Assembly: GCF_006345805.1 (NCBI RefSeq) | Contig: NC_043026.1 | Coordinates: forward strand, 7,998,001-8,062,000 | Reading direction: 5' to 3' | DNA from: Octopus sinensis | Lineage: Eukaryota | DNA length: 64,000 bases | Shown here: positions 13,144-59,987 of the stretch, piece after piece | Position numbering within the stretch: position 1 is the stretch's first letter | Layout: each line of letters opens with the position of its first letter | The notes under the pieces: generated by a model | Database searches by the model: none | What the model was told of the DNA's origin: nothing | What the model saw: only the letters and a program-made list of their open reading frames with translations | Made by a program: the position numbers and the translations under genes

Positions 13144-14747
13144 TATGCAACCAGCAATGCTGCAACGCCACCTAAAGAATAAACGCAATTAGGCCTCTCC
13201 TTCTCGATGGTGTTACGTACCTACTTCTAAAGCGCGGTGGGTACTTTCTTCTAAGCCAACTTTCTATTATTCTTTCTTCCAATTCTGTCTTGACAATGGT
13301 GTTACTCCAGAAAGTGGAAACTGCCAGTGTCTCCCTCTGTTCAAAAAAGGCGACCGCACATCGCCTGTCACTATCGCCCCGTCAGTCTACCAGCTGCATC
13401 GCCAAACTGATGGAATCTGTATCAGAGAAACCCTCTGGAACTTCTGGAAGTCTCACAAGCCTCATCCAGCCGTCACAATTCGGATTTATTCCTAACTCCA
13501 ACTGCTGTAATCAACTCATCGAGTTTCTGAGACGTTACCCAAATCACTGATCGTGGATCCTGGGTGGATGTTGTTTACCTGGACTTTGCTAGGCTTAACT
13601 CTGTGCCACACAAAAGACTTATGGTGAAGCTTTTCTGCGTTGGGTGTAAGAGACGAACTCTATACTGTAAAGTCCTTTATTTTCGCGAAAAGAGGTTGTC
13701 ACAGTTCTAGGACAGCACTCTTCGCCCTCTGAGATGACACTGGTGTGCCGCAGGGATCTGTTCTTGGCCCCCTTTTATTTGTTGCATATGTTAATGACAT
13801 AGATGCCAACTTAAAGAATGCCACAGTGCTGAAATATGCAGATGACATCAAGCTGTACCTCGAAATAAAGAGGTCAAATCCTATACACTATGGATCTCTA
13901 TTACAAGCAGACCTGGACACAATGCAGCAGTGGATCATGGACTGGCAACTCAAGCTGGCTGTGGACAAATGTACCACCATGCATTTTGGGAGGAGAAACC
14001 CAGCGTCCACCTGCTCCCTCCACAACACTAGTCTCAAAAAGTCTTCATGTGAACGTGACCTGGGTGTTATTGTCGACAGTGATTTGCGTTGGACAAAACA
14101 CATCGCTAAAATTGTCAAGAAGGCTGAGGGTGTCTTGGCATCACTCACTAAATCCTTTGTGAGCTGCTCTCCGGCTATCTATCTGCGGCTTTATATAGCT
14201 ATGGTAAGACCTCACCTGGAGTTTGCATCGCCGGTCTGGAGCCCCTATCTTGCCCAGGACATCAATCGTCTGGAAGCTGTTCAGCGACGTGCAACCAAAA
14301 GAATACCCTCCATCAGGCATTTGCCATATCCTGAACGCCTTACCTCCCTGGGCATGGACACATTGAAACTCCGACGTCTGGCAGCTGACTTGGCAGACAC
14401 CCATAAAATTATCAACCATCGTACAAACAATAACTCTGAGCACCTCTTCAAACTCCACCCATCTAACACCCGTGGACATATTTACAAAGTAAGAAAACAG
14501 CACAGCTCCCATGACTTCAGGAAACATTTTTTCACGCTGAGAGTTGCTGAAGCGTGGAATAAACTGCCGACATCGGTGTTAGTTGTCGGAGCACTGCTTC
14601 CTTCAAGACTTCCATGCTTCCTGAGATTCGCCAACACTACACTTGATTTTCCCCCCTCCATACCCCAGACATTTCTACACTACTGCATGTACTTTATATG
14701 CACTTTCTGACAAGTTGTGGTGCACCTGAGCACTGTATACAATAATT

Positions 14748-15367: not shown

Positions 15368-15420
<53 letters not shown>
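15180..15420. repeat. Compound (GAT/GGT/GTT)n repeats and (TA)n array
   Basis: Directly visible. Confidence 0.9.
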
Positions 15421-15422
<2 letters not shown>

Positions 15423-18082
15423 TAGATAATATCTTACCCCAAATAACCCCACTTCTTCCCTTAAGCCTGTGGATAAATACCGATGAGGTCCTTAAATGGT
15501 TTAATTCCCTAACTAATACGAATAATTTAGCCTTCATTCAATTCGATATAAAAACTACTACTCTAGCATTTCCCCTATCCTACTAAATAAATCGCTTATA
15601 TTCGCGATGAATCGCTCCCTCATATCTAGAGAAGAAATAGACATTATACTTTTAGCTAGGAAAGCATTATTGAATTTGAGGGAAAATTATGGACCAGAGC
15701 TGATACCCCTAACTTTTTCGATATTCCTATGGGCTCAAGTGATTCGGCTGAGGTAACCAATTTAGTAGGAGCATATCTACTGAAATGCATTAATAAAGAG
15801 ATCCCTGAATTGCAAGGTGGTCTATATAGAGATGATGCTTTGTTTGTTGTAAATACCAATAATAAATCACACATAGAAAGAATTAAAAAGAAGATTAATA
15901 GGTTCTTTAAAGATTTCAACCTTAGCATAACCTATGAACCAAACATTAAAATAGCTAATTTTCTAGATATTACTTTAGACCTTAACTCCAAACTACATTA
16001 TCCATTTAGAAAGGAAGGGGAAATCACTAGTTACGTAAATAAATTATCTAATCATCCCCCAAATATAATAAATTCCTTAGTTAGAAATATTTCCATAAGA
16101 ATATCCAAATTATCATCCAATTTTAATATATTTAACTCTCACTCAGGACATTACAATGAGGCGTTATCTAGAGCAGGATTTAACCAGAAAATTACTTTTG
16201 AAGATACGGAAAAACTAGGAACTCATCATAATATTTTAAGTAAATTAAACAGCAATAACCACATAAATAACAAAAATGATCAAGTCGAAAAGATACATAG
16301 ATGTGGATCTAATACAACATCTAATCGTAATGATAAGTATAAGGATAAATACATAGACCATAACACAGATAGCCCTGATAAGGCAACCTTAAATAAAATT
16401 AAAATTAAGAAACACACTATTAGTAACATAGACAACAACAATGACCATACCAGAAAGGTTAGTAGAAATAGATTTACAACGGCAAAGTACCCTAATGATA
16501 TTAAGAATATTAATAAAAACATAACAGAGAATACTTATAATAAGGGTAAAATAAACTTGGATAAAACTAGCAAACATGCTAACAGGAACATTAATAAATA
16601 CAAGGAATCTGATGATGGGACGATTAATTCTAATAACCCTAACTCTAGTGGGAAAAATTCTAGCAGCCCTAACTCTAATTCTAAGAAATTTAATAAGAAA
16701 GACATAATATGGCTAAACATCCCTTTTAACTGTGCGGTTTCATCAGATATTCAGGGTAGATTCAAAACAATTCTAGAAAATAATTTCCCATCCTCTCATA
16801 GATATCATAAAATATTTCTAAAAAAACAGTCAGAATTTCTTATTCAACTCTCCCAAATATGTCCACTTTAATAGCTAAGATCAATATTAATAACATAAAA
16901 CTAGCCAGAAATAATTTAATAAATAAAAATAAAAATACAACGGAAAATTGTAATAACAGTACGAAAAGTAATAATTGCAACAATAATAATAATAATAACA
17001 ATAATGAATGTCATAAAATAAATATAACCAAAAGCCATGGAATTGTTAATAACAATAATAACATAAATAGAAATGATTATGTTAGTAATAGGAATAATAC
17101 CATGAATGTAAGTACAGTGAATGAGAGTAACAACATTATCAGCAACAACACTACACATCTGGATAACAATATCGACAACAATACTAATAGCATCAACAAT
17201 ATCGGCAATAATAGTAGAGTTATAGAACCAAACGATAGTGTAGGAATACCGACAAATGATAATACTACTTTAGAAGATAACATCAACTGCAATAATGATA
17301 ACATTATTTTAGATAGCAGCACCAATAATAATAATAATAATGAAAGTAGGGCTTTAGAACCAAATGAAAATGTAGGAATACCTATAAATGATAATACTGT
17401 TTTAGATAATAATATTAACTACAATAATGATAGAGTTTTTTTAGATAATAACAATAATCAAAATCATGATAAATTTACCCGCTCTGCTTCGAGCAACAGT
17501 ATTATAAGACTTCTATCCTCAAGGTATTCCACCTCTAATTATAATGCCCCTAGATGTAACTGCAGAATTAAATCAAAATGCCCGGCCCCTGATTTATGCG
17601 GGTTAATTAACATAATCTATAAGTGCTCCGTTACCACAGATAATAATAAGTTCTCTTATGTTGGATGCACTGTAAATTTTAAACAGAGATTGAATAACCA
17701 TCTCTCATCTTTTAAATTACGTCATAAGGCTGATAGCACTACTCTTTCTAGTAAAATTTGGGAACTAAAAAACAATAACATCAAATATAACCTTAATTGG
17801 GAATTAGTCAGAAGAGCAAAACCCTATAAAAATAGCAGAGTAGGCTGCCAACTTTGCTCCATGGAAGCATTTGAAATACTAATGTATAAAAATAATGGAG
17901 AAATTCAATTAAACAGCAGAATTGAACTTGGAAATTCTTGTATACATGCTCGGTTAAGACTCTTAAATATTTTAAATGATATTTTAAATTATATCTCAAT
18001 TGATAACTGTATACTGGAATCATTTTACATAAAATTCATTTTGACTTACATATCACTCCTACATAGTATATTATATATTTAA
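15421..18082 (+). pseudogene. PLE reverse transcriptase - GIY-YIG endonuclease ORF, broken by about three frameshifts
   Basis: FIQFDIK, PMGSSDSAEV..GLYRDD, NFLDITLDL, SNHPP, IIWLNIPF; then CNCRIKSKCPAPDLC (CxCx5Cx5C), IIYKC..SYVGCT..FKQRLNNH, CQLCSME and SCIH. Frameshifts at ~15555, ~15662 and ~16820 fall in or next to A runs. Confidence 0.9.
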
Positions 18083-19277
18083 CTGGAAAGATAAGTTCTA
18101 ACTAGCTATGATTATAATTTTTTCTCTCTCTGATGGTACTATTTAATACTTATTGACTTAAATTATTTGATTTATTTCTATTGGACCATATTATTAATAA
18201 TTAAATTTTGCTCTATTTTTATCTCCATTTCTTAGTCTATTTTTTATCCCATTACAAATATTAGTTAGTTAATTCTCTTAATTTCTTTTTTTTTATTTAA
18301 AAAAAAAATTTTTTTTTAAATTAATTCTGCTAATACCAGACCTATCGTAGTGTATTGTGATGTGATATAATATATCAAAATAATATAATATAATATAGTG
18401 TAGTGTATTATAGTTTAGTATAATAATAATATAATTGTTTAATTTCATTTAAAAACATTATGTATGTATTATAGTTTAGTGTAATAATAATATAAAAGTT
18501 TAATTTCATTTAAAAACAACCCCATTTTTCTTTCCTTTCTAATGACCTCTTTGTAACCTGACAATCTATTAATAGTAACATTTATAAATAAAGAAATAAA
18601 TTGTTGACCTCAGTTCGAATTTGTTCCAAACAAACTTAGACTCTTTTGTTAGTATCAAATTGTGCCCATCCCCTTAGCTTCCCCTTTCCTTTCTCTTTGA
18701 CAGCTTAAATAGCAGTAACTGATTAAATTCCTACCCCCTTCCTCCTCTTTCTGTGATTCTTGAAAATTTCATTAACAACCTGAACCACTACAATATAAGA
18801 CTGCCATTTTTGCTTCTCATTCGGACTCCCTGATATTTTCGCATGATTGTACCCTAAATCTCTCCACAAAACTGGATTACGAACTATAAGGACATACACA
18901 AATTTTGTAAGTTCGAGACTTTTTCATCGGATCTCCAAAAAATCGAACTTATCTGCGATTCTTGTAAATTTCAATAACAATCTGTTCCTCTACACGATAT
19001 GACAGTCACTATGTTTTTACTCAGACTTTCCTCTACATGATGTGGCAGTCATTTTGCCTCTTACTCGGATTTTCAGAAATTTTGCATGACTGTACCCGAA
19101 AATTTCTTCATACAACTTGATCAAATATCCAATATGAGCTATATGTAGACATGCATAAATTCTATAGGTTTAAAACCTTTCATCGGATCTCCATGAATCG
19201 AACTTTCTTCAATGCAGTTAATCCTACAACCTCTTTTGTATCTACCCCTTTTGATGTTTGGGAATTCTCTGATGTTT

Positions 19278-19365
19278 TTTCGGCTGACGAGTACGAGCCA
19301 TCTGTATTCACTGCATTTTTTGTAGCTTATTAAAGATGTCCTCGTACGAAACGATCGTACCGAGA
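19278..19365 (+). ncRNA. Type I hammerhead ribozyme with palindromic stem III and extended stem II
   Basis: Stem I TTTCGG/CCGAGA, core CTGACGA (19284-19290), stem II GTACGAG/CTCGTAC, GAAA, stem III ACGATCGT, cleavage triplet GUA (cut after 19359). Confidence 0.88.
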
Positions 19366-19393
19366 TTTTAATCCATTCTTGTTGCTTTTTTTC

Positions 19394-19434
<41 letters not shown>

Positions 19435-19569: not shown

Positions 19570-19631
19570 GATAAGTGTTAGTGTGTAGAATGCAATGTAT
19601 GCGATGCAGGTTCGATTCCCGGGCGAAGCCA
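19570..19631 (+). other. tRNA-like 3' fragment (B box plus terminal CCA), not a complete tRNA
   Basis: GGTTCGATTCCCGGGCGAAGCCA; no matching 5' acceptor strand or proper D arm. Confidence 0.35.
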
Positions 19632-19681
19632 TTTACAATAATAATAAGAAGAAGATTGAAGTTTAATATTTCTGGAAATAT

Positions 19682-22600
19682 TTATTTGTCAAAATAAAAG
19701 AAAGCAAAAGATTGACGTCCAGGAATAATTCCAAAAACCATAAAAGAATTTTCTGAAACATCCAAACCAAGAACTTCAAAGACTTCATTATCATCCTCAC
19801 TGAGGAGTAAATATTTTCGATTATCTTCAGATGTTTCCTCTTCAATATGTCGAGGTATTTCGTAAATATTGTTTCTTCTATCTGTTATATAAACACATTC
19901 ACCAATTATTGTCAGATGAGGTCTTGGAATATAATATTCCCGACCAAAAATTATTTCTTCTTTTATTCTTATCCTCCTCACCAAAGACTTTTCACTGAAC
20001 GATTCCACAAAACAAAAACTTCCTTCCATCCAGACACCTTCTCCTTCATCTCCCTCCCCAAAACAACAACATCACCAAAAGATGTGACTCCCACATCTAC
20101 CACCCCTTCCTCTCCCTCCAACCTTCCCGATCTCCCCATCTTCCCACGACACACTTCATCTTTACATTTCCCATCGCTGATATCAACCACATCCACATAA
20201 TAAGAGTCAAAGATGTCGGGGTCTTTGCAATAATAGTAATCCTTGTTGTTCTCCCATATTCTTCCGTATTTCTTGTCTCTCTCTTCTTGTGTTATGTCTC
20301 TAATATAATGACCACCACACACGAGTTGATTGTCGTTGTATTTATAAATCCTGTTGTAGTATTTCTCAGTTCTGATGGTTTTTAAACGACGGAGATCCCT
20401 GTTGAAGACCCTCATTTCTCTCCCAAAGGCGACAATGAAACATTCCTCTGTCCACCGACATATGTCCAGTGGTGGTCGTTGTTGTTGTTCATGTTGAAGT
20501 ATGTCCACTGTTGTTGTTGTTGTTCTGATTAATGTGACACTTTCTCGAAACATCAACACACTCACATTCTCATCTAACTTAATTAGTTTACTGTTCCGGT
20601 CCCTAATGTCCCTCAAATCATAATCAACAGGTTCCTCGAATGCAGGAATGGAAAAAGGGACCATTGCTGTCCTATATGGAAGTCTCCTCACTGATATTTC
20701 ATCAATTCCTGAATTATTAATCTCCGCTATGTAATTACCACATCTCACCTTTAATCTACCTTTACCAATTATTTCACCTGATTTACCTCTTCTTCTTCCT
20801 CCTCCATCTCCATCTCCTCTTCTGTATTTCAATTTATTAATTAATTCATTACTGAATATTTCCTTGTTCGTTTCAGATGTAATGGAAGGGAAACGAAGAC
20901 CAGAATCAAGATTTGATAACGACACAGAATCCAGAATGTTCACTTGGTCCCCATCAATCTTTATGCAATGACATTCAATCAATTCATTATGTACACACAA
21001 GTAAATATTTCCCACTTTTCTCCATATTACACCATAAGGGATGAGACTCGACCAAACTTGAGATGTCTGCAAATCTTCTCCATTCAGTTGAAATATTTCT
21101 TTCCTTTTAGGAACCGTGGCCATTATGTGTGATTCATGTGTAAAACACACACCACCAACTAAACTTGCAACTTTTCTGTGACGTAGCAACTGGCCGTCTT
21201 CATCGAATATTTTAACATTTCCATTATTGGCTTTTTCACACACAACTGTCTTTCCTTCCTCAGAGACATCAAAATCTTTTACTTGAACAGGACATTCGTC
21301 TGTTTGTAAACGAACAACCGGGAAGCTGTCTCGATTCACCATAAACAACCCTTCAACATACAATTCATTCCTCCATCCCCTCCTATGGCTTCCAACAAAC
21401 CTTGGTCCTTTACAGTCTATACTGGAGAAATCTAATTTATGTTTAAAAATTCTTTTGTTTAAAAATATTCTCTCGTATTCCCCATTCTGGGTCAAACACA
21501 AAATTTTTTTATATCCAGATAAACGAAAACATTTCTCCCACCGACCATAAATGTACAAAAAACTGTCATCAATTGTCATCCTGTCATCATCACCAAAATA
21601 CTTCATGTAGTGTCTGACTGAATGTAAATATTGACCACCACTGTTGAAGAAAATGATGAATTCTTGTTTAAGACAATGATGACATCTTCATCAGTAACTT
21701 TAATATCCTGGATTCTATCATAATACTTTCCATCTTCGTTTCTCTCTATTAATGGTTCAGGTATGTCTATTTTGTTTGTTTCCTTCACACTCGAACGTAT
21801 TTCATCAATTTCAACAAAATACAAATGTCTTACATCTCTCCATTCACTCAAAACCAGTTGATTATTTGATAAAGAAGCTATACAATCATAATTATTTCTC
21901 GTTTGGTAAATTAGCAACGACAATGGATATTCCACTTTTAATGTCAACAGTTGGTGTTTATTAGGATCTTTATAATCCCCATTCGTAATGACCAGTGTGT
22001 TTGACTGCCATCGACACATTTTAGTATTGTCATAAACATTCACTTTGATTAAATCCAATAGGTGACCATCCAGTGTGAATATCTTAATGTTTCCATTCTT
22101 CCTGTCACATCCTGCAATCAGATTATTTTCTGTAATAACCAAACGTTCAATCCACACTGGTTCTTTGTCTCCCAAATGTTTAGGGAGAGGAATATGTCTG
22201 GCTTTATCAGAAACTTTCAGGTCCTGTAGATATAAAGTGGAAGACAACATTTCGCTGAGAGAAATGTGTCTGGAAAATACATCCACCAGGTCGATATAAT
22301 AATTAAGATGATTATTAGTAACAAGATCATTAACCAACAAATTATGACCTCTATGACCACCACCACCTATTCTAGTGTTGTACTGAAAAGCTTTTCCCCT
22401 AGTAACAATCAATAGCTTTAGTGTTTCCTTGTCTATTGATAATGATTTCACAAACACAGGGATATTAATTGTCTTAATTACTTCGACTTGATTATAATAA
22501 TTAATAGTTAAAATGTCTAAATGTGATGGTTTATCACAATAACAAACAATTTCACGTTCACCCATCTTACACACCCGTACATAAGGCTGCCTTAATAATA

Positions 22601-24830
22601 CACTTCTCACTGTATTTGATAGGTTTCCGATGACCCTTAATTGTTTCTGTAGGGGTAATGTGACCCCTATATGATCAGAACCCCATCGACATATATCTGT
22701 GGCTGTAGACGGCAGAGATAATCTGGACACAATGTCTCCTTCCTCAGAAATGTACAACAAGCAATCATGGTTGATGTCGAACACCACCAACTGTCCATTG
22801 GACAGATTACATATTTCGCCAATGACAAGTTTTTGGTCATTCTCCTTTTCTTTGAGTCGTAGATTTAGATTTCTGATATAAGGATTTTTAATGGGTAAAA
22901 GGCAGCCAGACGACCGGTCTTGATACTTGTAAAGAAGAACCCTGTTGAGTTGAGTGTCCGGGACATAAAGAGTTCCTTGGAAAACAGCAATGTGAGGGTG
23001 AACAGGGAAAGGCAGTTCCCACTGCCATTTCATTTGTCCATATAGATCGTAACATCTGAGAATACAGTGTCTTCTGAAGAGGACATAGAAATAAACATTA
23101 TCAGAGTAGATGTGATGAGGGTGGCCATAGAATGGAAGGTATTTTTGAAAAAGTTCTTCACCACATGTGGAATAAAATACCATTTTATTTTCGTTTCCAT
23201 CTATGACTACAAAATTAATTGGAGTTGCAGCAATGCTGACATTATGATGTCCCAGAGAAATTCTTTCTGCAATGTCAACTTTATCTTCGTGGATCAAGAG
23301 GATATGGACCTCGCTTTTGTTTCCACTTGTGGTTAGAGCTAAACACTTATTTGATACAACATGACATAGTGTAATGTAATCAGTATGGACTTTCATTAAA
23401 GGGCCTTTTCTTAGTTCAGGACAGGTGATATACTGAAATCCTTTCATTTCACGATAAAATACCAGGAATCTGTTTGCGTTTATTCTACAACAGAAAGAAG
23501 GAAGCTCAAGGAAAACTGAATTATTTTGGTTAATTATTTCCCCATTATCAGTGAATAATTTAGCTTTCTTGTTTTTGTAAATTATTAATATAGAAGATGT
23601 AGACATAGGTAGAATATTTGTAATGTTGTAGCAATCCTCAATATCAATATAGTCTTTTAAACTGGGGGTATGTAGCTGGTGGTTGTATGACAGTTTGGGC
23701 CAAAAGTCTTTATTCATTTGAATACCATGTGGTCTGCCGCAATAATCTGTTACCAAAATGGTATCTTTACCAACAGAAATAGAGCGGCATTTCTTGCCAA
23801 TGTCCCTCCTTGTTACACCACCTTTAGCTGAAATCCTATAAATTATTTGTCCCTGGAGGACATAGAAATAATTTTGGTACAGAGAGATTTTACTAGGGAG
23901 ATGCAGAGAATGGGTCTCTACCTCCCATAACTGTTGGCCATCCAGTTTAAAACAGATTACTCTTTTAATACTGGGAAATGATATTAAAAGAATATTCTGG
24001 ACCCCTACAGCAATATCTGTAGGGGTTTCTTTGGTAATAAATTGATAGTTAATAGTGTTATCCTCCCAATCAAATTGGTAAACTGTTTTACCAAACATTT
24101 CTACACCTATTAGTGTAGAATCTTCCAAGTAACTCACCATATATAACCCCAACTTTATCCTTTTGATCTTAAAGGTTTTGGGGCTGATAATAAGAATCAT
24201 TTCTTGGAAGGGGAGGGTTGCCAGAACCATGTCTTCACTGATTCTGGTGAAATTGGTGACAGAAGATGGACAATGGACATCAATTCTGTCACCATTTCTT
24301 GACAAACAACATATTGTCATAAAATGGTGGGAATATGTTACCATTCCCTCACGTATGACAATGACATTGGATATTATGCTTTTCTCCAATTCTTCTCCAG
24401 ATTCCTCGATCTTTGCTTCTCTTGTCACAACCGGGCAAAGAGGCCGGAATTTTGTGGGTAATTTTGATGGCTCAATGGTTTTGTGTTTGTCTTGTAAATT
24501 ATTTCTCTGTAAATAGTGTTCCAGGAACAATTCTAGTTTTCCAGAAATTATTAATTCTTGATTGTAAACATTTTCTTTTTGTAAAGTAATTGTATCCATT
24601 CCTATATTTTTAAAAAAAGTACATTCTTCTTCCTGAGAATTTATCAACAAATTAATTTTGTCCTCATAGGCATTGAATCTTGTATAAGATATGTGTTTGT
24701 CCAAAACATCTTGTTTTCTAATTATTTCCCAGTTTTTAGGGTCTCCTTTATTGTCACCTCCTTCTTCATCCCATTTTGGTGTCGAGCCCCTTAAAGCTCT
24801 TTTCTGAGTATTTTCAGTCTGGTCTTCCAT
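19682..24830 (-). CDS. Uncharacterised ~1716-aa multi-beta-propeller (NHL/WD-like) protein in one exon; apparent 1-nt deletions near 21660 and 19990
   Basis: ORFs of 1075, 542 and 115 aa overlap and join into one frame if 2 nt are added (5149+2=5151 nt). Repeated blade motifs include PTDIAV, ATDICRW, PLDICRW, KIFTLDG and KIFDEDG. A splice acceptor (TTTCCTTATATTTCTTTACAG) ends at 24838, and AATAAA overlaps the stop codon (19681-19686). Confidence 0.85.
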
Positions 24831-26934
24831 AGTGAATCTGTAAAGAAATATAAGGAAAACATTTAGCTTTGTGAAAATATTAAAGTTTCAGGGAGATGAT
24901 GTTTGCTTCATCATTTGAAAAACACAAACAAAACATTTATGTATTTCTGTCAGTGAATTAATCTTGTCTAATTAATATTTAAACAACTAATTACAATCTA
25001 TTCTAAGATGTATTAATAAGTTTTATTAATTACATGGAGTCTAAATATTAGAAATAATTATTTTCACTGGAAATGATATTTGCTCTCAACATCACAAAGA
25101 AATAGTCATGTGTGGCTTAGATTTATTAAACGATAGTTAGTCAAAGAGATTCCCCTGCTCCAAAAGCACTCAATAACGAGACACTCTAAGCTGTAGAGAA
25201 AATTAACTTTAATTGGTGTACATGCTATATTATGTCCCAACACACAGCAATCATGTTCAAACTTCGTTAACATGGAACAATTAGCAAAAGATAGACTTTA
25301 TTAGGTTTCATAGACATTTGTCAGATACAAGTATTACTAATGATGGGACAGTCATCGTTGGCTTGGTTTCCATCATATTTACCTGGATTAACAGATACGA
25401 ATAAAGCTGGAGATGAAACTGTTCTTAACCTGACAAATGCTGTAAATCTCTCAACATTTCAATATAATCCACACAATTATCATACACAACATTGATTAAA
25501 CTGGGAAAGCTTATCCAAAGATAGGCTTTCATATAATCACACTGATAGACAGCATGTTGAGAGGATCGTTATTATTTGTTGCTGATTGAGATCATAAAGA
25601 TTGGTTAATGAATAAGCCCAATTAATGAAAGGTAGGTTCATCTTAATTATCTTTATATAAGGGACAATGTTGGGTAGCAATGAGAAAGATGTGTTTGTAT
25701 GAAAAAGGGGTTTGACAGGTGAAGTGTGTTTTGTTTTGTGTCAGGTGAGGAGTTATAACTTGGTGTAGTTTATTATGAAGTATTGGGGGTTTTATGAGGT
25801 GGATTAGGAAATATTGGTGGGGGTGTTTAATGACATTGTGGTATCCCATCATCATCAGAATGATCCTCCACCGCCTCCTTGGTCTATGAAATAATGACTG
25901 TTAATCTGTTGACCCCAGGGGGAATGAAAAGTAAAAGAGACCTTCTTCAGGATGTCAGCTCTTTGAATAAACATGGACTAAACAACAACATATTTTGGAG
26001 AAAAGCTGGATAAGGCTATGTTGTTGTTATTGCTGTTGTTGACAACAAAGTTTATAAAGAGAAAAGCAGATAATTGCCAATATTTCTATTGTAAAATTAA
26101 ATTGGAATTAATGTTTATGTTTCATTTGTGCCATTCTACTTGGTTTATTTTGGGGAAGAAAAACCTACAAAACCCCTCATAATAATTAGACTTTAATCTA
26201 ATCGTAGATGTATTTATATACACATGCATACATATATATGAATGAATGTGTATAATATATACACAAGGATGCACATATGTATATTTATACATCCATACGT
26301 CTGTATGTATGTATGATGATCATCATTTTACCCCCACTTTCCATGTTGGATGGTTCAAAGAATATCTTGCCTGAAGTTACATTTTCTGGTTATCTTTCCA
26401 CAGCTGGATGCTCTTCCTGACACCAACCACTGCACAATGTGCACTGGGTGCATCTTATGGCACCATCACTAGAGACGATCACCATGTCCTTGACAAAACT
26501 AAAGGGTCCCCTCAATCTCTGGGTGTGACATATACCTTGGGATGGGTGAGAGATCTAGGGTAATAAATATATGAAAAGGAGTGGCTGAGTGTTGGGGAGA
26601 GACTCAGGTAGGTCCAGTAACATCCCCAGTTTCATTGGAAGAATGGTGAAGAGAAGAGATTTACTGCAAATCTTTGTCACAGCAGTAAGATAGAGTAAAA
26701 AGAAGAAGAGAGAGTGATTGAGAGATGAAAGATAGAGGTGGGGGTGATAGGGGCATGGCAGTAGGGACTCAAGGTCCGAGAGTTGACACTCATCAAACTG
26801 GGTTTTGGAGGTCTGGGAATACACCTCCAAAGAACCAGTTTGATAAATGCTAATAAACGAAAATTTCGGATCTTGGGTCAGTTTGTTACTTCTGCTAAAT
26901 ATTTATATATATATATATATATATAAATCAAAAT

Positions 26935-28182: not shown

Positions 28183-28669
28183 CATACACATACATGTACA
28201 AATGTAGATATGCATACATGAATATACACACACATGTATATACCATAGGCTTTATCAGTTCCATGTATGAAACCCATTCACAAGGCTTGAGTCGACCTGG
28301 AACATTAGAAGAAGTTAATTCTTTAAGGTGCTGCAAAGTGGGACTGAACCTGAGACCACAAGGTTCTGAAGTGAATTTCTTAACCATACAGCCATGCCCC
28401 CAAATTTTTTTGGTAATATTTTGAAGATAATAATAATCCTTTCTACTATAGGCATAAGGCCTGAAATTTTGGGTGTGGGGGGTTAACTGATTATGTCACC
28501 CCCCAGCCCCTAACTGGTTCTTATTTTATCAATCCCAAAAGGACGAGGGGCAAAATCAACCTTGGTGGAATTTGAACTCAAAATGTAAACTTGGAAGAAA
28601 TGATGCAAAGTATTTTGTCTGGCATTTTGTAACAATTCTGCTTGTTCATCACATTAATAATAATAATAA

Positions 28670-29056
28670 TATTAATAATATAATAATAATAATAATAATA
28701 AGAAGAAGAAGAAGAAGAAGAGAAGAATATCAATAACTATAACAATAACAACATCAATAATAATAATATTAGCAGCAGCAGCAAAAACAACAACAACAAC
28801 AGCAATGATTTCTTTTATTTTTTTTTTATATAATAAAAATGATTTCAAGTTTTGGCACAAGGCCAGCAAGTTCAAGGAAGGGTCCAGTCTATTACACTGA
28901 CCCCAGTACTCAACTAGTACTTAATTCATCGATCCCAAAAGGATGAGAGGCTAAGTCAACCTTGGTGGAATTTGAACTCAGAATGTAAAGATGGACAAAA
29001 TGCCGCTCAACATTTTGCTTTGCATCCTCACAATTCTGCCAGCTCGTCACAGTAAT

Positions 29057-29100
<44 letters not shown>

Positions 29101-29515
29101 GAAGAAGAAGAAGAAGAAGAAGAATATCGATAACTATAACAATAACAACATCAATAATAATAATATTAGCAGCAGCAGCAAAAACAACAACAACAACAGC
29201 AATGATTTCTTTTATGTTTTTTTTAATATAATAAAAATGATTTCAAGTTTTGGCACAAGGCCAGCAAGTTCAAGGAAGGGTCCAGTCTATTACACTGACC
29301 CCAGTACTCAACTAGTACTTAATTTATCGATCCGAAAAGGATGAGAGGCTAAGTCAACCTTGGTGGAATTTGAACTCAGAATGTAAAGATGGACAAAATG
29401 CCGCTCAACATTTTGCTTTGCATCCTCACAATTCTGCCAGCTCGTCACAGTAATTATAATAATAATAATATAATAATAATAATAATAATAATATAAGAAG
29501 AAGAAGAAGAAGAAT
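28670..29515. repeat. Tandem duplication of a ~400-bp unit (microsatellites plus SINE B, minus strand)
   Basis: Units at ~28700-29099 and ~29100-29495 are nearly identical; a third unit starts at ~29496. Confidence 0.9.
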
Positions 29516-44105: not shown

Positions 44106-45810
44106 AATTATTGTATACAGTGCTCAAGTGCACCACAACTTGTCAGAAAGTGCATATAAAGTATATGCAGTAATGTAAAAATGTCTGGAAAGTGAACAAT
44201 GTATGAGTCAGATACATGCTTGTGTGTGTATGGAGGGGAGAAAATCAAGTGTAGTGTTGGCGAATCTCAGGAAGCATGGAAGTTTTGAAGATGCAGTGCT
44301 CCGACAACTAACAACTGATGCCGGCAGTTTATTCCATGCTTCAGCAACTCTCAGCGTGAAAAAATGTTTCCTGAAGTCATGGGAGCTGTGCTGTTTTCTT
44401 ACTTTGTAAATATGTCCACGGGTGTTAGATGGGTGGAGTTTGAAAAGGTGCTCAGAGTTATTGTTTGTACGATGGTTGATAATTTTATGGATGTCTGCCA
44501 AGTCAGCTTCCAGACGTCGGAGTTTCAATGTGTCTATGCCCAGGGAAGTAAGGCGTTCAGGATATGGCAAATGCCTGATGGAGGGTATTCTTTTGGTTGC
44601 ACGTCGCTGAACAGCTTTCAGACGATTGATATCCTGGGCAAGATAGGGGTTCTAGACCGGTGATGCAAATTCCAGGTGAGGTCTTACCATAGCTATATAA
44701 AGCCGCAGATAGATAGCCGGAGAGCGGCTCACAAAGGATTTGGTGAGTGATGCCAAGACACCCTCAGCCTTCTTGACAATTTCAGCGATGTGTTTTGTCC
44801 AACGCAAATCACTGTCGACAATAACACCCAGGTCACGTTCACATGAAGACTTTTTGAGACTAGTGTTGTGGAGGGAGTAGGTGGACGCTGGGTTTCTACT
44901 CCCAAAATGCATGGTGGTACATTTGTCCACAGCCAGCTTGAGTTGCCAGTCCATGATCCACTGCTGCATTGTGTCCAGGTCTGCTTGCAATAGAGATCTA
45001 TAGTTTACAGGATTTGACCTCTTTATTTCGAGGTACAGCTTGATGTCATCTGCATATTTCAGCACTGTGGCATTCTTTAAGTAGGCATCTATGTCATTAA
45101 CATATGCAACAAATAAAAGGGGGCCAAGAACAGATCCCTGTGGTACACCAGATGTCATCTCATAGGGCGAAGAGTGCTGTCCTAGAACTGTGACAACCTC
45201 TTTTCGGCTGAAAATAAAGGACTTCAACCAGTTATAGAGTTCGTCTCTTACACCCAACGCAGAAAGCTTCACCATAAGTCTTTTGTGTGGCACAGAGTTA
45301 AAAGCCTTAGCGAAGTCCAGGTAAACAACATCCACCCAGGATCCACGATCAGTGATTTGGGTAACGTCCTCAAGAAACTCGATGAGTTGATTACAGCAGC
45401 TGGAGTTAGGAATAAATCCGAATTGTGACGGCTGGATGAGGCTGTGAGACTTCCAGAAGTTCCAGAGGGTTTCTCTGATACAGGATTCCATCAGTTTGGC
45501 GATGCAGCTAGTAAGACTGATGGGGCAATAGTTGACAGGCGATGTGCGGTCGCCTTTTTTTAACAGAGGGATGACACTGGCAGTTTTCCACTGTTCTGGA
45601 GTAACACCATTGTCGAGACAGAATTGGAAGAATAGAAAAAGTTGGCTTAGAAGAAAGTACCCACCGCGTTTGAGAAGTAGGTATGTAACACCATCGAGAC
45701 CAGGAGAGGCATAATTGCGTTTATTCTTAAGGTGGCGTTGCAGCATTGCTGGTGTAAATTGCATAGTAGATATAGAGTCCGATGTCAGTGGTGATGAAGA
45801 TGGAATTACA
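44082..45810 (-). mobile_element. 5'-truncated CR1-like LINE, young copy 2
   Basis: A 370-aa RT ORF (LDFAKAF, PQGSVLGP, YADD) stops at one TGG>TAG change (44652-44654) and continues in frame. It has a (TTA)n tail and TA-rich flanks. Confidence 0.95.
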
Positions 45811-45989
45811 TATATATATATATATATATAATTAAATTAGGGATAAAAGCACTATTAGGCAAATCAAACAGTGTAAAACATAAACCAAGACATAATTAAA
45901 ATTATTAATATGATATACAAAATATATAAAATATAAAATTTATATATATGTATACACTATATATATACATATATATATATACATACATA

Positions 45990-46106
<117 letters not shown>

Positions 46107-46117
46107 CGTATATATAT

Positions 46118-46149
<32 letters not shown>

Positions 46150-46154
46150 GTATA

Positions 46155-46194
<40 letters not shown>

Positions 46195-46195
<1 letters not shown>

Positions 46196-46332
46196 TGAAG
46201 TAGATAAGTGAATTATCTTATTACGGATAATTCAAATGATAACCGATACCTGGGTAGCCTTTGAAACATATGTAGAAAATAATAAAAAGGAATTTTGTTA
46301 AATCTTCGTTCAGCTCCATTTCTTCCTACACT
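46195..46332 (+). mobile_element. Remnant of a probable PLE terminal repeat containing a hammerhead 3' half (GAAACATATGTA)
   Basis: Shares sequence with the 56.1-56.5 kb element (GATACCTGGG; AATCTTCGTTCA.CTCCATT). No CTGANGA is found upstream. Confidence 0.45.
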
Positions 46333-46427
46333 AAATATATATATATATATATTATATATATATATATATATTATATATATACATATATGTATATATATAT
46401 ACATATATATATATGTGTGTGTGTATG

Positions 46428-46459
<32 letters not shown>

Positions 46460-46489
46460 TATATATATATATATATATATTGTATATAT

Positions 46490-46918
46490 ATAATAATAAT
46501 AATAATGAAATTAATTGTATACAATGCTCAAGTGCACCACAACTTGTCAGAAAGTGCATATAAAGTATATGCAGTAATGTAGAAATGTCTGGAAAGCGAA
46601 CAATGTATGAGTCAGATACATGCTTGTGTGTGTATGGAGGGGAGAAAATCAAGTGTAGTGTTGGCGAATCTCAGGAAGCATGGAAGTTTTGAAGGATGCA
46701 GTGCTCCGACAACTAACAACTGATGCCGGCAGTTTGTTCCACGCTTCAGCAACTCTCAGCGTGAAAAAATGTTTCCTGAAGTCATGGGAGCTGTGCTGTT
46801 TTCTTACTTTGTAAATATGTCCACGGGTGTTAGATGGGTGGAGTTTGAAAAGGTGCTCAGAGTTATTGTTTGTACAATGGTTGATATTTTTATGGGTGTC
46901 TGCCAAGTCAGCTGCCAA
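46490..46918 (-). mobile_element. CR1-like LINE, short 3' copy 3
   Basis: LADTHK..HDFRKHFFTLRVAEAWNKLP..HYT*, 3' UTR and (TTA)n tail; both ends lie in (TA)n. Confidence 0.95.
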
Positions 46919-47047
46919 TATATATATATATATATGTATATATATAATATATATATATATCTATATATATATATATTATATATACACATATATATATACA
47001 TATATATGTATATATATATATACACATATATGTATTTATATATATAT

Positions 47048-47097
<50 letters not shown>

Positions 47098-47103
47098 TGT
47101 GTG

Positions 47104-47183
<80 letters not shown>

Positions 47184-47239
47184 TATATATACGTATATAT
47201 ATATGTATGTATATATACATATATATATATATATACACA

Positions 47240-47277
<38 letters not shown>

Positions 47278-47299
47278 CATATATATATATATGTGTGTG

Positions 47300-47341
<42 letters not shown>

Positions 47342-47357
47342 ACATATATATATACAT

Positions 47358-48603
47358 AAAGGAGTTTCACCTTTACCAGTATTATATTACTCTTCAAAAA
47401 ACAGGTGGATGAATGAACACTTGTTCACAGAATGGTTCATCCAAGAATTTGTGCCAGCTGAACAAAAGCGCTCTCACAAATGTGGTAAACCTGATTCAAA
47501 GTGCCTGCAGCTATTACACAATTGCAGAGCACATCCTCACGACACAAAACTAGTGTCATCGTGTGGGAATGTTTTTACGTGCTACTTACCACCGAATGTG
47601 ACATCTCTCATTCAACCTCTGGAGCAAGGGATTATTTGGAGCTTAAAACGTTTCTACAGAAATGATTTCAAGATGAATATGATAAATAGCAATGTTAGTA
47701 TAGGCAATTTCCAGTGCAATTTTACCATCAAAGATGCCATTTTTTCCCTTGCAAGTGCATGGAATCAGGTTTGAGCAGGCACATTAACAGAAGCGTGGGG
47801 GAAATTATACCCAGTGTCTTGTGCTCCTAAAGTGAAAGAAGCAGAAAATGTATCTGGAGTACAAAATATTCTTGAAAGTAGAGGATTTCCAACCAAACAC
47901 ACCGTTCTTCAATCACTTGATGCAAATGGAATTGAAATGTGGGTTTGACAAGATGAAGAAAACACTGAACAATGTCCTGAAGACAATATTGGTCATGAAA
48001 TTAGTGACAGCAATGGCTCCCATTCGAGTGAATCTTATGTAAATGGCCAAGAACACTCTAATGAGGAAATATCATGGGATAAGATGACAGAAAAGTCTAT
48101 GGAGATAGTGATAAAATTTCTAGAAAGAAATCCTTACTTTAGTGACAACTATTTTTGGCAAGCAATGTCACTTTGAAAGGATATGATCATAAAGAGACTA
48201 CAGCACGAGGAAATAGTGGAGTTTGGTGATCGCTTGAGGAATGCAATGGCAGACCCCGTCAGTTTGATAAATGAAGACAGAAACAAAAGTGAAGAAGCTC
48301 ATTCAATGAACGCATAAAAGTATTCTACATTGGTGATTGGTTGTTAAATGCAGATAATTTATGTAATAAATACCTAACAATTAACATTTATTTAATTAGA
48401 AAAAAAATTTGAAAGTAAATTAACATTATTTAATATTAATTTATTTTCAAATTTTTTCCCCCCAAGCAATGATATTTAACAATTCTTTAAAATATATAAT
48501 GTGCTCATCTTAATATATACATTAAATACTAGAAGGGGTACCCGGAAATGTAAGAGGAAATATTTTCAACATAGCACACGTTCGAATTAGAGGAGTTCTA
48601 CTG
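47358..48603 (+). mobile_element. pogo/Tigger-like transposon, 3' half
   Basis: [37 protein letters not shown]; the right terminus reverse-complements to CAGTAGAACTCCTCTAATTCGAAC and is followed by TA. Confidence 0.85.
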
Positions 48604-59055: not shown

Positions 59056-59056
<1 letters not shown>

Positions 59057-59099
<43 letters not shown>

Positions 59100-59177
59100 T
59101 ATAATAATAATAATAATAATAATAATAAAATAATAATAATTAATAATATATATAAATAATAATAATAATTAATAATA

Positions 59178-59210
<33 letters not shown>

Positions 59211-59466
59211 TAATAAATATAAATTAATAATAATATAATAATAATAATAATAAAATTAATAATAATAATATAAATAATAATAATAATAAAATAATAATAA
59301 TAATAATAATATAAATAATAATAATAATCATAATAATAATAATAATAATAATAATATAAATAAAATTAATAATATAATAAAATAATAATAATATAATATA
59401 ATAATAATAATAATAAAATTAATAATATAATAATAAAATAATAATAATAAAATAATAATAATCAAT

Positions 59467-59497
<31 letters not shown>

Positions 59498-59515
59498 ATT
59501 AATAATAATAATATA

Positions 59516-59549
<34 letters not shown>

Positions 59550-59690
59550 TAATAATTAAAATAATAATATAAATAATAATAATAATAAGAATAATAATAA
59601 TAATTAATAATTAATAATAATAATATAAATAAAATAATAATAATAATAATAATAATAAATAATAATAATATAAATAAAATAATAATAATA

Positions 59691-59721
<31 letters not shown>

Positions 59722-59737
59722 TAATAATAATAATATA

Positions 59738-59771
<34 letters not shown>

Positions 59772-59843
59772 TTAATAATAATATAATAATTAAATTAATA
59801 ATAATAATAATAATAATAAAAAAATAATAATAATAATATAATA

Positions 59844-59876
<33 letters not shown>

Positions 59877-59933
59877 AATAATAATAAAATAATAATAATA
59901 ATAATAATAATAATAATTAATAATAATAATATA

Positions 59934-59967
<34 letters not shown>

Positions 59968-59987
59968 TATAATAATAATATAATAAT
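59057..59987. repeat. ~930-bp imperfect (AAT)n microsatellite
   Basis: Directly visible. Confidence 0.95.

What the first reader, a model, noticed from the sequence alone, without database searches (positions are those of the whole stretch)
19682..24830. Giant single-exon protein made of about six tandem, highly diverged beta-propellers
Seen: a 5.15-kb uninterrupted exon in an otherwise repeat-saturated region, free of transposon insertions. It has about six ~250-aa modules of beta-strand-rich blades with NHL-like DI(C/A)x motifs and no visible signal peptide, TM segment, RING or B-box. Established: NHL-like propellers in molluscs usually occur singly at the C-terminus of TRIM-like proteins. 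Inference: a lineage-specific cytosolic multi-propeller scaffold or sensor family, possibly immune or RNA-binding, with no described function known to me.
Basis: partly seen in the sequence, partly recalled or inferred. Interest (0 to 1): 0.72.

Follow-up and report, generated by a model that had tools for sequence, protein, structure and literature searches.

The report
Frameshifted octopus six-NHL-propeller giant gene
This is one copy, broken by two single-base deletions in the assembly, of an undescribed octopus-only family of intronless genes that encode about 1,800-residue proteins built from six tandem NHL-type beta-propellers; the family is unusual, but this copy is probably a young pseudogene or carries assembly errors.

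Summary
The coordinates are right: minus strand, ATG at 24830, stop at 19682-19684. But the region is not one uninterrupted exon. It reads as three ORFs in three frames (1075, 542 and 115 aa), separated by two 1-nt deletions that no compared paralogue shares.

Bridging both deletions gives 1,716 codons with no stop. There are no transposon insertions, no signal peptide or TM-like segment, and no RING or B-box.

The gene belongs to a family found only in Octopus sinensis, O. vulgaris, O. bimaculoides and Argonauta hians. Every member is named "uncharacterized". All seven intact members whose gene ranges I checked are single coding exons of 4,989-5,742 nt, and an eighth locus holds an intact 1,811-aa ORF.

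AlphaFold2 with Foldseek, profile self-comparison and domain profiles against PDB sequences support a variable helical N-terminus followed by six roughly 265-aa beta-propellers. Four modules give E <= 0.01 to TRIM-NHL domains; modules 4 and 5 do so clearly (Brat 6e-6, TRIM3 1e-6), modules 1 and 3 marginally.

The family has slowly evolving 1:1:1 orthologues and a young, fast-evolving cluster on one small chromosome, with many truncated or fragmentary gene models. The window copy sits in that cluster and also lacks a conserved 41-aa segment. Function is unknown; a multivalent cytosolic binding platform is my inference.

The parts
19682..24830 (-). Whole coding region of the family member. The conceptual product is 1,716 aa when the two frame changes are bridged with X.
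   Evidence: ORF list, tblastn with P0007, bridged translation without stops.
21603..24830 (-). ORF 1, 1075 aa. It holds the N-terminal region, propellers 1-3 and most of propeller 4, and ends at a TGA created by frameshift 1.
   Evidence: The AF2 model has confident all-beta domains at residues 150-380, 393-636, 670-820 and 890-1056.
24390..24830 (-). Variable helical or disordered N-terminal region, about 147 aa, shortened by deletions relative to paralogues.
   Evidence: pLDDT below 50 with three helices. N-terminal alignment has 29% mean column identity. No PDB match.
23667..24389 (-). Propeller 1 (residues 148-388), six blades.
   Evidence: 23-24 strands of 4-8 residues at pLDDT about 80-88. 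Profile hit to the Brat NHL domain, E = 0.007.
22911..23663 (-). Propeller 2 (residues 390-640).
   Evidence: AF2 strands at pLDDT about 70-83. Profile hits to designed 'Bagel' propeller blades (E = 6e-4) and TRIM3 (E = 0.1).
22365..22847 (-). Propeller 3, N-terminal four blades (residues 662-822). This is the family's most conserved stretch (NGQLVV.D, TDICRW, G.TLPL).
   Evidence: Alignment A5. Near-invariant columns. Profile hits to TRIM2 (E = 0.007) and TRIM3 (E = 0.04) NHL domains only.
22347..22353 (-). Site of an in-frame deletion: 123 nt missing relative to L004 and 267 nt relative to L005. It removes the conserved MVPSVL...FVYLID.SRMFAIND segment.
   Evidence: blastn break, indel tables, paralogue sequences.
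21382..22178 (-). Propeller 4 (conceptual residues 885-1150), split by frameshift 1.
   Evidence: AF2 strands 894-1065. Profile hits to Brat (E = 5.9e-6), Thin (4.5e-4), TRIM3, TRIM2 and TRIM71.
21661..21664 (-). Frameshift 1: one base missing relative to L001, L003, L004 and L005.
   Evidence: Multiple alignment.
19978..21606 (-). ORF 2, 542 aa, second frame. It holds the end of propeller 4, propeller 5 and most of propeller 6.
   Evidence: The AF2 model is beta-rich but of low confidence.
20572..21381 (-). Propeller 5 (conceptual residues 1151-1420), with the NNGNVKIFDEDGQLL blade.
   Evidence: Profile hits to TRIM3 (1e-6), TRIM2 (2e-6), TRIM71 (2.5e-6), Thin, Brat and Mei-P26, and to designed WD40-like WRAP-T proteins (5e-15). 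hhalign links it to module 4 at 93% probability.
19685..20571 (-). Module 6 (conceptual residues 1421-1716), split by frameshift 2. Its propeller nature is inferred only.
   Evidence: hhalign matches P0007 731-796 to 1517-1580 at 88% probability. No PDB sequence hit. Beta-rich, with pLDDT 70-85 over ORF2 residues 380-500.
20014..20019 (-). Frameshift 2: one base missing at the edge of a T run. The window has G followed by five T; L004 has six T and L005 has A followed by five T.
   Evidence: Multiple alignment.
19682..20029 (-). ORF 3, 115 aa, third frame. It holds the conserved C-terminal end (...FGIIPGRQSFAFFYFDK) and the family's normal stop.
19681..19686 (-). AATAAA hexamer overlapping the stop codon; a possible polyadenylation signal (inference).
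   Evidence: Sequence.
24838..24860 (-). Pyrimidine tract followed by CAG, 8 nt upstream of the ATG. It looks like a splice acceptor, which would imply a separate 5'-UTR exon (inference).
   Evidence: Sequence. The upstream 120 nt still align to the O. bimaculoides paralogue L003.

Best explanation
Window 19682-24830 (minus strand) is a member of an octopod-restricted, undescribed gene family. The window probably comes from Octopus sinensis chromosome CM016888.1.

Shown. Intact members are single coding exons of 4,989-5,742 nt encoding 1,662-1,913 aa. The protein has a poorly conserved helical N-terminus of about 110-240 aa, followed by six tandem modules of about 265 aa. Modules 1-4 fold as separate small beta-propellers, and modules 1-2 are six-bladed. 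Modules 4 and 5 are significantly similar, and modules 1 and 3 marginally similar, to the NHL propellers of TRIM-NHL proteins. RING, B-box, signal peptide and TM segment are absent. The family has slowly evolving lineages kept 1:1:1 in three Octopus species. It also has a young clade amplified by segmental duplication on one small chromosome, with weak constraint and many truncated or fragmentary gene models. The window copy belongs to that clade. As assembled, it carries two private 1-nt deletions and a private 41-aa deletion of a conserved segment.

Inferred. This copy is a recently disabled duplicate. It could make at most a 1075-aa product with three and a half propellers. Intact family members act in the cytoplasm as multivalent binding platforms, with each NHL-type propeller offering a ligand-binding face for protein or RNA, as in Brat, TRIM71 and TRIM2/3. 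The fast-turnover clade reflects selection for changing ligand specificity, such as recognition of non-self or of selfish elements.
For: Frames and deletions.

Family range and names.

Single-exon CDS: seven members from four species have a gene range equal to 3 x residues + 3. L005 holds an intact 1,811-aa ORF.

Fold: the AF2 model of ORF1 has four all-beta domains at pLDDT 70-88. Foldseek gives 1,550 PDB hits at E <= 1e-3; the listed top 50 are all multi-propeller proteins (IFT-A, LRP2, Trm734, DDB1, SF3B3).

Internal repeats: hhalign 93%, 88% and 60% probability at offsets of about 265-290 aa or a multiple (786 aa).

NHL type: module profiles against PDB sequences. The weak outside hits of the family profile are themselves NHL or RING + B-box proteins.

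Evolution: the NJ tree and identities show P0050/P0073 at 99.5%, P0054/P0077 at 93.9%, and the window copy at 83% to its nearest relatives. dN/dS is 0.45-0.55 between the four distantly related intact copies (L001-L004) and 0.82-0.94 within the young clade. The C-terminal part shows an N:S excess of 69:12 over three lineages.

Segmental duplication: the gene is about 92% identical, and more than 10 kb of flanks 88-96% identical, to L005 on the same chromosome.

Decay: the window has the most lineage-specific changes (113, against 69 and 65) and private deletions. L009 in O. vulgaris has five frame-breaking indels, including one of 88 nt.
Against: Both frameshifts are single-base deletions, and one lies at a T homopolymer. 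The remaining 1,716 codons contain no stop. Most other indels are multiples of three. That pattern also fits residual indel errors in a long-read assembly of a multi-copy region, so the copy may be intact.

No read, transcript or independent assembly of this locus could be found. No experiment or expression datum bears on function. The Pfam NHL model does not reach its threshold on any single family sequence. The 3D model of the C-terminal third is poor, at pLDDT 47, so modules 5-6 rest on profile evidence.
Confidence: 0.6

Rival explanations
1. The gene is intact in the animal. The two 1-nt deletions are consensus errors of the long-read assembly, and the locus encodes a 1,716-aa six-propeller protein that is a functional member of the young clade.
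For: Both breaks are 1-nt deletions, one beside a T run. No stop occurs in the ancestral frame over 1,716 codons, although about 113 lineage-specific substitutions would be expected to create several stops if they were all neutral (my estimate). Other indels are in frame. N:S in the 5' two-thirds of the window lineage is 53:30, similar to the intact copies. The O. sinensis model P0013 at L005 is annotated as 859 aa, yet the locus holds an intact 1,811-aa ORF, so annotation there is unreliable.
Against: The copy also carries a private 123-nt deletion of a conserved segment and N-terminal deletions that cannot be base-calling errors. It is the most diverged of the four close copies. Truly decayed copies exist in the family: L009 has 2-nt and 88-nt deletions.
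Confidence: 0.38
2. The ORF is cargo of, or derived from, a mobile element. That would explain its lack of introns, its many copies and its repeat-rich setting.
For: The CDS is intronless and the family has dozens of copies and fragments. RT, GIY-YIG and DDE ORFs lie nearby.
Against: The family has no transposase, RT or integrase domain. No terminal direct or inverted repeats flank the gene apart from (TA)n. Copies are duplicated together with more than 10 kb of unrelated flanks. Some lineages are single-copy and 92-99.5% conserved across three species on large chromosomes. dN/dS of about 0.5 indicates host-level constraint. The neighbouring 4-kb block holding the GIY-YIG ORF is absent from the paralogous locus, so it is a later insertion.
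Confidence: 0.03
3. The propellers are WD40-type or YWTD-type rather than NHL-type. The protein would then resemble DDB1-like or EML-like scaffolds, or LRP-like receptors.
For: Foldseek's best matches are WD40 and YWTD multi-propeller proteins. The module 5 profile scores highest against designed WD40-like WRAP-T proteins, at 5e-15.
Against: No Pfam WD40 or Ldl_recept_b hit was found. Modules 1-2 have about 24 strands, which is six blades rather than seven. Natural proteins hit by four module profiles (E <= 0.01) are almost only TRIM-NHL domains. There is no signal peptide, EGF or TM segment. The Foldseek ranking is driven by multi-domain length, at about 10% identity and TM 0.15-0.22.
Confidence: 0.1

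Closest known systems
TRIM-NHL proteins (Drosophila Brat, Thin, Mei-P26; vertebrate TRIM2, TRIM3, TRIM71/LIN-41)
   Same: The blade motif is shared: hydrophobic strand, D..N, hydrophobic strand, then (D/E)G. Module profiles reach E = 6e-6 (Brat), 1e-6 (TRIM3) and 2.5e-6 (TRIM71). The propellers are six-bladed, about 240-280 aa. The proteins are cytosolic, with no signal peptide.
   Different: There is no RING, B-box or recognisable coiled coil. There are six propellers in tandem instead of one at the C-terminus. The Pfam NHL model stays below threshold on single sequences. The CDS is intronless and the family is restricted to octopods.
Molluscan TRIM-like RING + B-box + six-bladed-propeller proteins (for example Potamilus streckersoni KAK3588083.1, P0070) and unnamed NHL-repeat proteins P0067 and P0071
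   Same: These are the only non-octopod proteins reached by the family profile, at E = 1.7e-7 to 1e-3, over propeller 3.
   Different: They are 300-560 aa with one propeller. P0070 keeps RING and B-box. Identity is about 25% over 85 columns.
Multi-propeller scaffolds (DDB1/SF3B3/CPSF160 type, EML TAPE domain, IFT-A subunits, Trm734)
   Same: Several beta-propellers sit on one chain and serve as docking platforms. These are the best Foldseek matches, at E = 1e-17 to 5e-20.
   Different: They have two or three seven-bladed WD40-like propellers, often interdigitated. Sequence identity is about 10% and there is no profile-level sequence link. They are ancient, single-copy and intron-rich genes.
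LRP1/2/4/5/6 YWTD propeller arrays
   Same: They carry many six-bladed propellers in tandem and give Foldseek E of about 1e-18.
   Different: They are extracellular receptors with a signal peptide, EGF and LDL-A modules and a TM helix. None of these features is present here.

Membership tests
NHL-repeat beta-propeller (Pfam PF01436, propeller clan) | A single sequence reaches the Pfam NHL gathering score (20 bits). | tested here: not met
   No NHL hit for the window ORFs or P0007. The best family member, P0054, scores 18.5 bits. Module 5 sequences give E of about 0.1.
NHL-repeat beta-propeller (Pfam PF01436, propeller clan) | Significant profile-level sequence similarity to experimentally solved NHL domains. 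| tested here: met
   Module 4: Brat 5.9e-6, Thin 4.5e-4, TRIM3 4e-3. Module 5: TRIM3 1e-6, TRIM2 2e-6, TRIM71 2.5e-6. Modules 1 and 3: 0.007. Module 2: 0.1 only. Module 6: none.
NHL-repeat beta-propeller (Pfam PF01436, propeller clan) | Six four-stranded blades of about 40 residues closing into one propeller. | tested here: inconclusive
   The strand count in the AF2 model fits six blades for modules 1 (23-24 strands) and 2 (about 22). Coordinates could not be inspected. Modules 3-4 are cut by the deletion and the frameshift, and modules 5-6 are poorly modelled.
TRIM-NHL (RING, B-box, coiled coil, NHL) | N-terminal RING and B-box zinc-binding domains. | tested here: not met
   No RING or B-box in the window ORFs, P0007, P0024, P0050, P0051 or P0054.
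TRIM-NHL (RING, B-box, coiled coil, NHL) | Coiled coil preceding a single C-terminal NHL domain. | tested here: not met
   There are six modules, not one. The N-terminal helices have pLDDT below 50 and no PDB match.
WD40 multi-propeller scaffolds (DDB1-like, EML-like) | WD40 repeats detectable by Pfam; seven-bladed propellers. | tested here: not met
   No WD40 Pfam hit and about six blades per module. Only fold-level similarity and a module 5 hit to designed WD40-like proteins.
LDL-receptor class B (YWTD) arrays | Signal peptide, EGF spacers, a TM helix and the Ldl_recept_b repeat. | tested here: not met
   None found by Pfam. The N-terminus is hydrophilic and no TM-like segment is present.
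Pseudogene (unitary or duplicated, non-processed) | Frame-breaking lesions relative to intact paralogues that are real in the genome. | tested here: inconclusive
   Two private 1-nt deletions and a 41-aa deletion are present in the assembly. Reads are not available, there are no in-frame stops, and no independent assembly of the locus exists.
Transposable-element gene | Element termini (TIR or LTR with target-site duplication) and a transposition enzyme in the unit. | tested here: not met
   Only (TA)n repeats flank the gene. No TE domain in the protein. Copies duplicate together with long flanks.

The most novel reading that the evidence does not exclude
Octopods evolved, from a TRIM-NHL-like propeller, a new class of intronless giant proteins carrying six ligand-binding NHL propellers. 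The young, clustered, near-neutrally or positively evolving copies would form a birth-and-death repertoire of cytosolic recognition proteins, for example for viral or transposon RNA or protein. This would be a previously unrecognised arm of cephalopod innate defence. The conserved single-copy lineages would carry a housekeeping scaffold role.
Probability: 0.15. Interest if true: 0.7.

Novelty: new variant of a known kind. Interest (0 to 1): 0.45.

Why it matters
NHL propellers are known as single C-terminal ligand-binding domains for RNA or protein. To my knowledge, a chain of six in one intronless, octopod-only protein is an architecture that has not been described. The sequences sit in databases only as 'uncharacterized protein'.

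The family shows conserved 1:1:1 lineages beside one chromosome-bound cluster of dozens of full and fragmentary gene models, with dN/dS near 1 among the young copies examined. That makes it a candidate lineage-specific recognition system in animals whose immunity and genome defence are poorly understood. It also adds a gene family to the short list of large octopus expansions (protocadherins, C2H2 zinc fingers, GPCRs).

For annotation, the result shows that many models in this family are truncated or mis-spliced. One example is P0013, annotated as 859 aa over an intact 1,811-aa ORF. The window copy itself is of limited interest, because it is a broken or mis-assembled member.

Tried and rejected
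- **blastp self-comparison.** P0007 against itself (BLOSUM45, E <= 10) found no internal repeats.
- **hhalign self mode.** It returned nothing. Segment-against-segment hhalign was needed.
- **Whole-protein Pfam and PDB searches.** Both gave nothing useful. Only module-level profiles from eight loci worked.
- **First profile search.** It failed because the profile exceeded 1,200 positions. I repeated it with DNA-referenced trimmed sequences.
- **Locus look-ups.** P0001 and P0029 were not on record.
- **AF2 of ORF2.** The model was poor (pLDDT 47), probably because the ORF starts and ends inside propellers. Its Foldseek hits are all propellers but carry little weight.
- **Independent assembly or orthologue spanning the frameshifts.** None was at least 96% identical. 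L009 in O. vulgaris looked like an orthologue but is closer to L005 and has different lesions.
- **Assembly technology.** I first assumed from memory that the O. vulgaris assembly was HiFi-based. The paper says ONT plus 10x with Hypo polishing (PMC10700109). Broken O. vulgaris models therefore cannot be taken as error-free evidence.
- **Literature.** Searches by topic, LOC ids, XP ids and UniProt ids found no description.
- **tRNA scan.** It found none.
- **N-terminal profile.** No death-fold, TIR or coiled-coil match.
- **TE-type terminal repeats.** None found.


Full report
**1. Observation**

The finding lies on the minus strand. The ORF listing gives three consecutive ORFs in three different frames: 24830..21603 (1075 aa), 21606..19978 (542 aa) and 20029..19682 (115 aa) (sequence). 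The region is therefore not an uninterrupted exon.

tblastn with a full-length paralogue (P0007, 1,798 aa) gives three abutting HSPs that switch frame at about 21665 and about 20015. It finds nothing else in the 64-kb window.

Alignment with paralogous loci shows that each frame change is a single missing base, private to the window copy. One lies at 21661-21664. The other lies at the edge of the T run at 20014-20019.

Bridging both gaps gives 1,716 codons with no stop. No insertion longer than 14 nt is present relative to paralogues, so the gene is free of transposon insertions. It does lack 123 nt (41 conserved residues) near 22347-22353, as well as parts of the N-terminal region.

The DI(C/A) motifs are real. 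Pfam finds no RING or B-box. Hydropathy shows a hydrophilic N-terminus and no TM-like segment.

**2. Family**

The 1075-aa ORF finds 48 protein clusters. All are from Octopus sinensis, O. vulgaris or O. bimaculoides, and all are named 'uncharacterized' or 'hypothetical'. The query's own cluster sits on a 15,106,159-bp contig, which is the length of O. sinensis CM016888.1. I infer that this chromosome is the window's source.

A profile of the N-terminal 984 positions was searched against 1.84 billion representative proteins. Only 30 hits reached E <= 0.001. Every strong hit I looked up is from Octopus or Argonauta hians, apart from one unnamed MetaClust fragment, P0060. The family is therefore at least as old as the Octopus-Argonauta ancestor and was not detected outside octopods. 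This is absence of evidence and depends on which proteomes are in the library.

Intact members have 1,662-1,913 residues. All seven whose gene ranges I checked are single coding exons, with gene length equal to 3 x residues + 3. They are P0026, P0041, P0017, P0003, P0050, P0051 and P0054. An eighth locus, L005, holds an intact 1,811-aa ORF, although its annotated product is 859 aa. Literature searches by topic and by identifiers found no description.

**3. Architecture**

AlphaFold2 on ORF1 with a 48-sequence alignment gives a mean pLDDT of 64. Four separate all-beta domains reach pLDDT 70-88, at residues 150-380, 393-636, 670-820 and 890-1056. They follow a low-confidence helical N-terminus.

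Domain 1 has 23-24 short strands and domain 2 about 22, which is six four-stranded blades each. Foldseek against the PDB returns 1,550 hits at E <= 1e-3. The top hits are multi-propeller proteins: IFT-A, LRP2, Trm734, DDB1 and SF3B3. Identity is about 10% and TM-scores are low because inter-domain orientation differs. This result gives the fold class only.

Plain self-comparison finds no repeats. Segment-wise profile-profile comparison does. In P0007 numbering, 931-999 matches 1222-1290 (93% probability), 731-796 matches 1517-1580 (88%), 696-827 matches 961-1099 (60%) and 452-559 matches 720-823 (29%). The offsets are about 265-290 aa, or three times that.

Together with the length (about 1,630 aa after the N-terminus), this supports six modules. 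The model of ORF2 is poor, at pLDDT 47. Modules 5-6 therefore rest on profile evidence and on weak Foldseek support.

**4. Kind of propeller**

Single sequences do not reach the Pfam NHL threshold. The best is 18.5 bits, in P0054.

I built module profiles from eight loci, plus the window where its frame allowed (not for modules 4 and 6). They span the oldest lineages (alignments A5-A10). Searched against all PDB sequences, they gave:

| Module | Best PDB sequence hits |
|---|---|
| 1 | Brat 0.007 |
| 2 | designed 'Bagel' blades 6e-4; TRIM3 0.1 |
| 3 | TRIM2 0.007; TRIM3 0.04; almost nothing else |
| 4 | Brat 5.9e-6; Thin 4.5e-4; TRIM3, TRIM2, TRIM71 at 0.004-0.017 |
| 5 | TRIM3 1e-6; TRIM2 2e-6; TRIM71 2.5e-6; Thin, Brat, Mei-P26; designed WD40-like proteins 5e-15 |
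| 6 | nothing |

The weak non-octopod hits of the family profile point the same way. P0067 and P0071 reach the Pfam NHL threshold, and the mussel protein P0070 has RING + B-box + propeller. The N-terminal region is poorly conserved and matches nothing.

Conclusion: these are diverged NHL-type propellers, six in tandem, without the TRIM N-terminal module.

**5. Evolution and status of the window copy**

A neighbour-joining tree shows old lineages kept one-to-one across species:

- P0050 (O. vulgaris) and P0073 (O. sinensis) are 99.5% identical; P0050 and P0074 (O. bimaculoides) are 91.6%.
- P0054 and P0077 are 93.9% identical.

The tree also shows a crown clade with many O. vulgaris and O. sinensis copies, which contains the window copy. 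Most crown-clade models lie on O. vulgaris OX597841.1 (29.2 Mb) and O. sinensis CM016888.1 (15.1 Mb). Many are N-terminal or C-terminal fragments.

The window gene and more than 10 kb of its flanks match L005, at 4.40 Mb on the same chromosome. Identity is about 92% in the gene and 88-96% in the flanks, which indicates a segmental duplication.

NG86 dN/dS values are:

- 0.45-0.55 between the four distantly related intact copies, L001-L004. By region, this is 0.30-0.41 over propellers 1-3 and 0.50-0.75 further 3'.
- 0.82-0.94 among the window, L005 and L004.

In the last 40% of the gene, the three young lineages together show 69 nonsynonymous and 12 synonymous single changes. That exceeds the roughly 3:1 expected without selection, which is a hint of relaxed or diversifying selection. 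It is not a formal test.

The window lineage has the most private changes, 113 against 69 and 65, and is the most diverged of four close copies. On the other hand, its N:S ratio in the 5' two-thirds is 53:30. It has no in-frame stops, and most of its indels are multiples of three. This means that it kept an open frame for most of its history.

The two frameshifts are therefore either very recent or errors. The O. vulgaris assembly is ONT-based with short-read polishing (PMC10700109), so broken models there are not clean evidence either. L009, however, has 2-nt and 88-nt deletions that are hard to attribute to base-calling. No independent assembly or transcript of the window locus could be found. 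I put a real, recent pseudogene at about 0.55-0.6 and an assembly artefact at about 0.4.

**6. Mechanism**

Shown: the architecture, the NHL-type relationship, the absence of targeting signals by simple tests, the intronless structure, and the two-speed evolution with a clustered birth-and-death clade.

Inferred from established knowledge of NHL domains: Brat and LIN-41/TRIM71 bind RNA on the propeller's top face, and TRIM2/3/32 bind proteins. By analogy, intact members would be cytosolic multivalent binding platforms. The rapid turnover of the young clade would reflect changing ligands. Immune or anti-selfish-element recognition is the most attractive guess, but it is untested.

As assembled, the window copy would yield at most the N-terminal 1075 residues. 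Propeller 3 would lack a conserved segment and propeller 4 would be cut.

**7. Rivals**

- **Mobile-element origin.** This is unlikely. There are no element ends and no TE domains. Copies duplicate with long flanks, and conserved single-copy orthologues exist.
- **WD40 or YWTD identity.** This is not supported by Pfam, by blade number, or by which natural proteins the module profiles hit.
- **Secreted LRP-like receptor.** This is excluded by the lack of a signal peptide, EGF modules and a TM segment.

**8. Verdict**

Its interpretation is largely supported at the level of family and architecture, and untested at the level of function.

The family is a new architectural variant of a known domain class, and it is undescribed. 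The window copy is a defective or mis-assembled member. Interest is moderate.

Noticed in passing
window 15408-19394 (+): A block of about 4 kb directly 3' of the propeller gene is absent from the paralogous blocks L005 and L009. It holds ORF 15729-16871 and the Asn-rich ORF 16859-18082, which has a borderline GIY-YIG hit (21.8 bits against a cut-off of 22.6). It looks like a later insertion, possibly a Penelope-like or other GIY-YIG element.
   Followed up: partly
window 13745-14710 (+), 44655-45764 (-), 46827-47771 (+): Transposon-derived ORFs: two reverse-transcriptase fragments (RVT_1, E = 5e-15 and 3e-34) and a DDE_1 transposase fragment (3.5e-25). The DDE_1 fragment lies next to long (AT)n arrays at 45922-47358.
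   Followed up: no
window 19609-19630 (+): An exact tRNA T-arm/acceptor-like string (GGTTCGATTCCCGGGCGAAGCC) lies about 50 nt beyond the gene's stop codon. ARAGORN calls no tRNA, so it is probably a tRNA-derived SINE fragment.
   Followed up: partly
window 24482-24807 (-) compared with L004, L005 and L003: The first 110 or so codons of the family come in two versions that look unrelated (MEDQTENT... and MEKINEENKMLA...). The window carries the first version, although the rest of the gene is closest to copies with a different N-terminus. The DNA on both sides of this segment aligns to L005 while the segment itself does not. This looks like cassette-like exchange or gene conversion among paralogues.
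   Followed up: partly
L005 9512-14947 (O. sinensis CM016888.1, about 4.40 Mb): The annotated product at this locus (P0013, LOC118768491) has 859 aa from a spliced model. The locus actually contains an intact 1,811-aa single ORF, so the family is under-annotated.
   Followed up: yes
L009 6458-11500 (O. vulgaris OX597841.1, about 8.32 Mb): This copy is annotated as three separate genes (384, 359 and 499 aa). It has five frame-breaking indels, including 2-nt and 88-nt deletions, so it is a real decayed copy. A C2H2 zinc-finger gene lies next to it.
   Followed up: yes
L001 1-18460 (-) and 10001-15406 (+): The intact member P0026 lies antisense inside the span of another gene model (1,956-aa product). 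It is apparently nested in that gene's intron.
   Followed up: no
P0064 and P0093 (O. vulgaris, 12.0-Mb record): Gene models named 'E3 ubiquitin-protein ligase MIB2-like' contain a stretch matching the start of propeller 1 of this family. This is either a chimeric annotation or a real fusion of a fragment to an E3 ligase gene.
   Followed up: no
P0038 and P0041 C-termini; P0026 near residue 1040; P0051 (Argonauta) N-terminus: Lineage-specific low-complexity insertions occur within family members: long (ESEDQIS)n acidic repeats before the last blades, a D/N/G-rich acidic insert, and (ADNTRMV)n repeats.
   Followed up: no
window 59056-59987 and 28512-29514: An (ATA)n array of about 930 bp explains the GC dip to 0.18. 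There is also a 398-bp tandem repeat with 2.5 copies.
   Followed up: no
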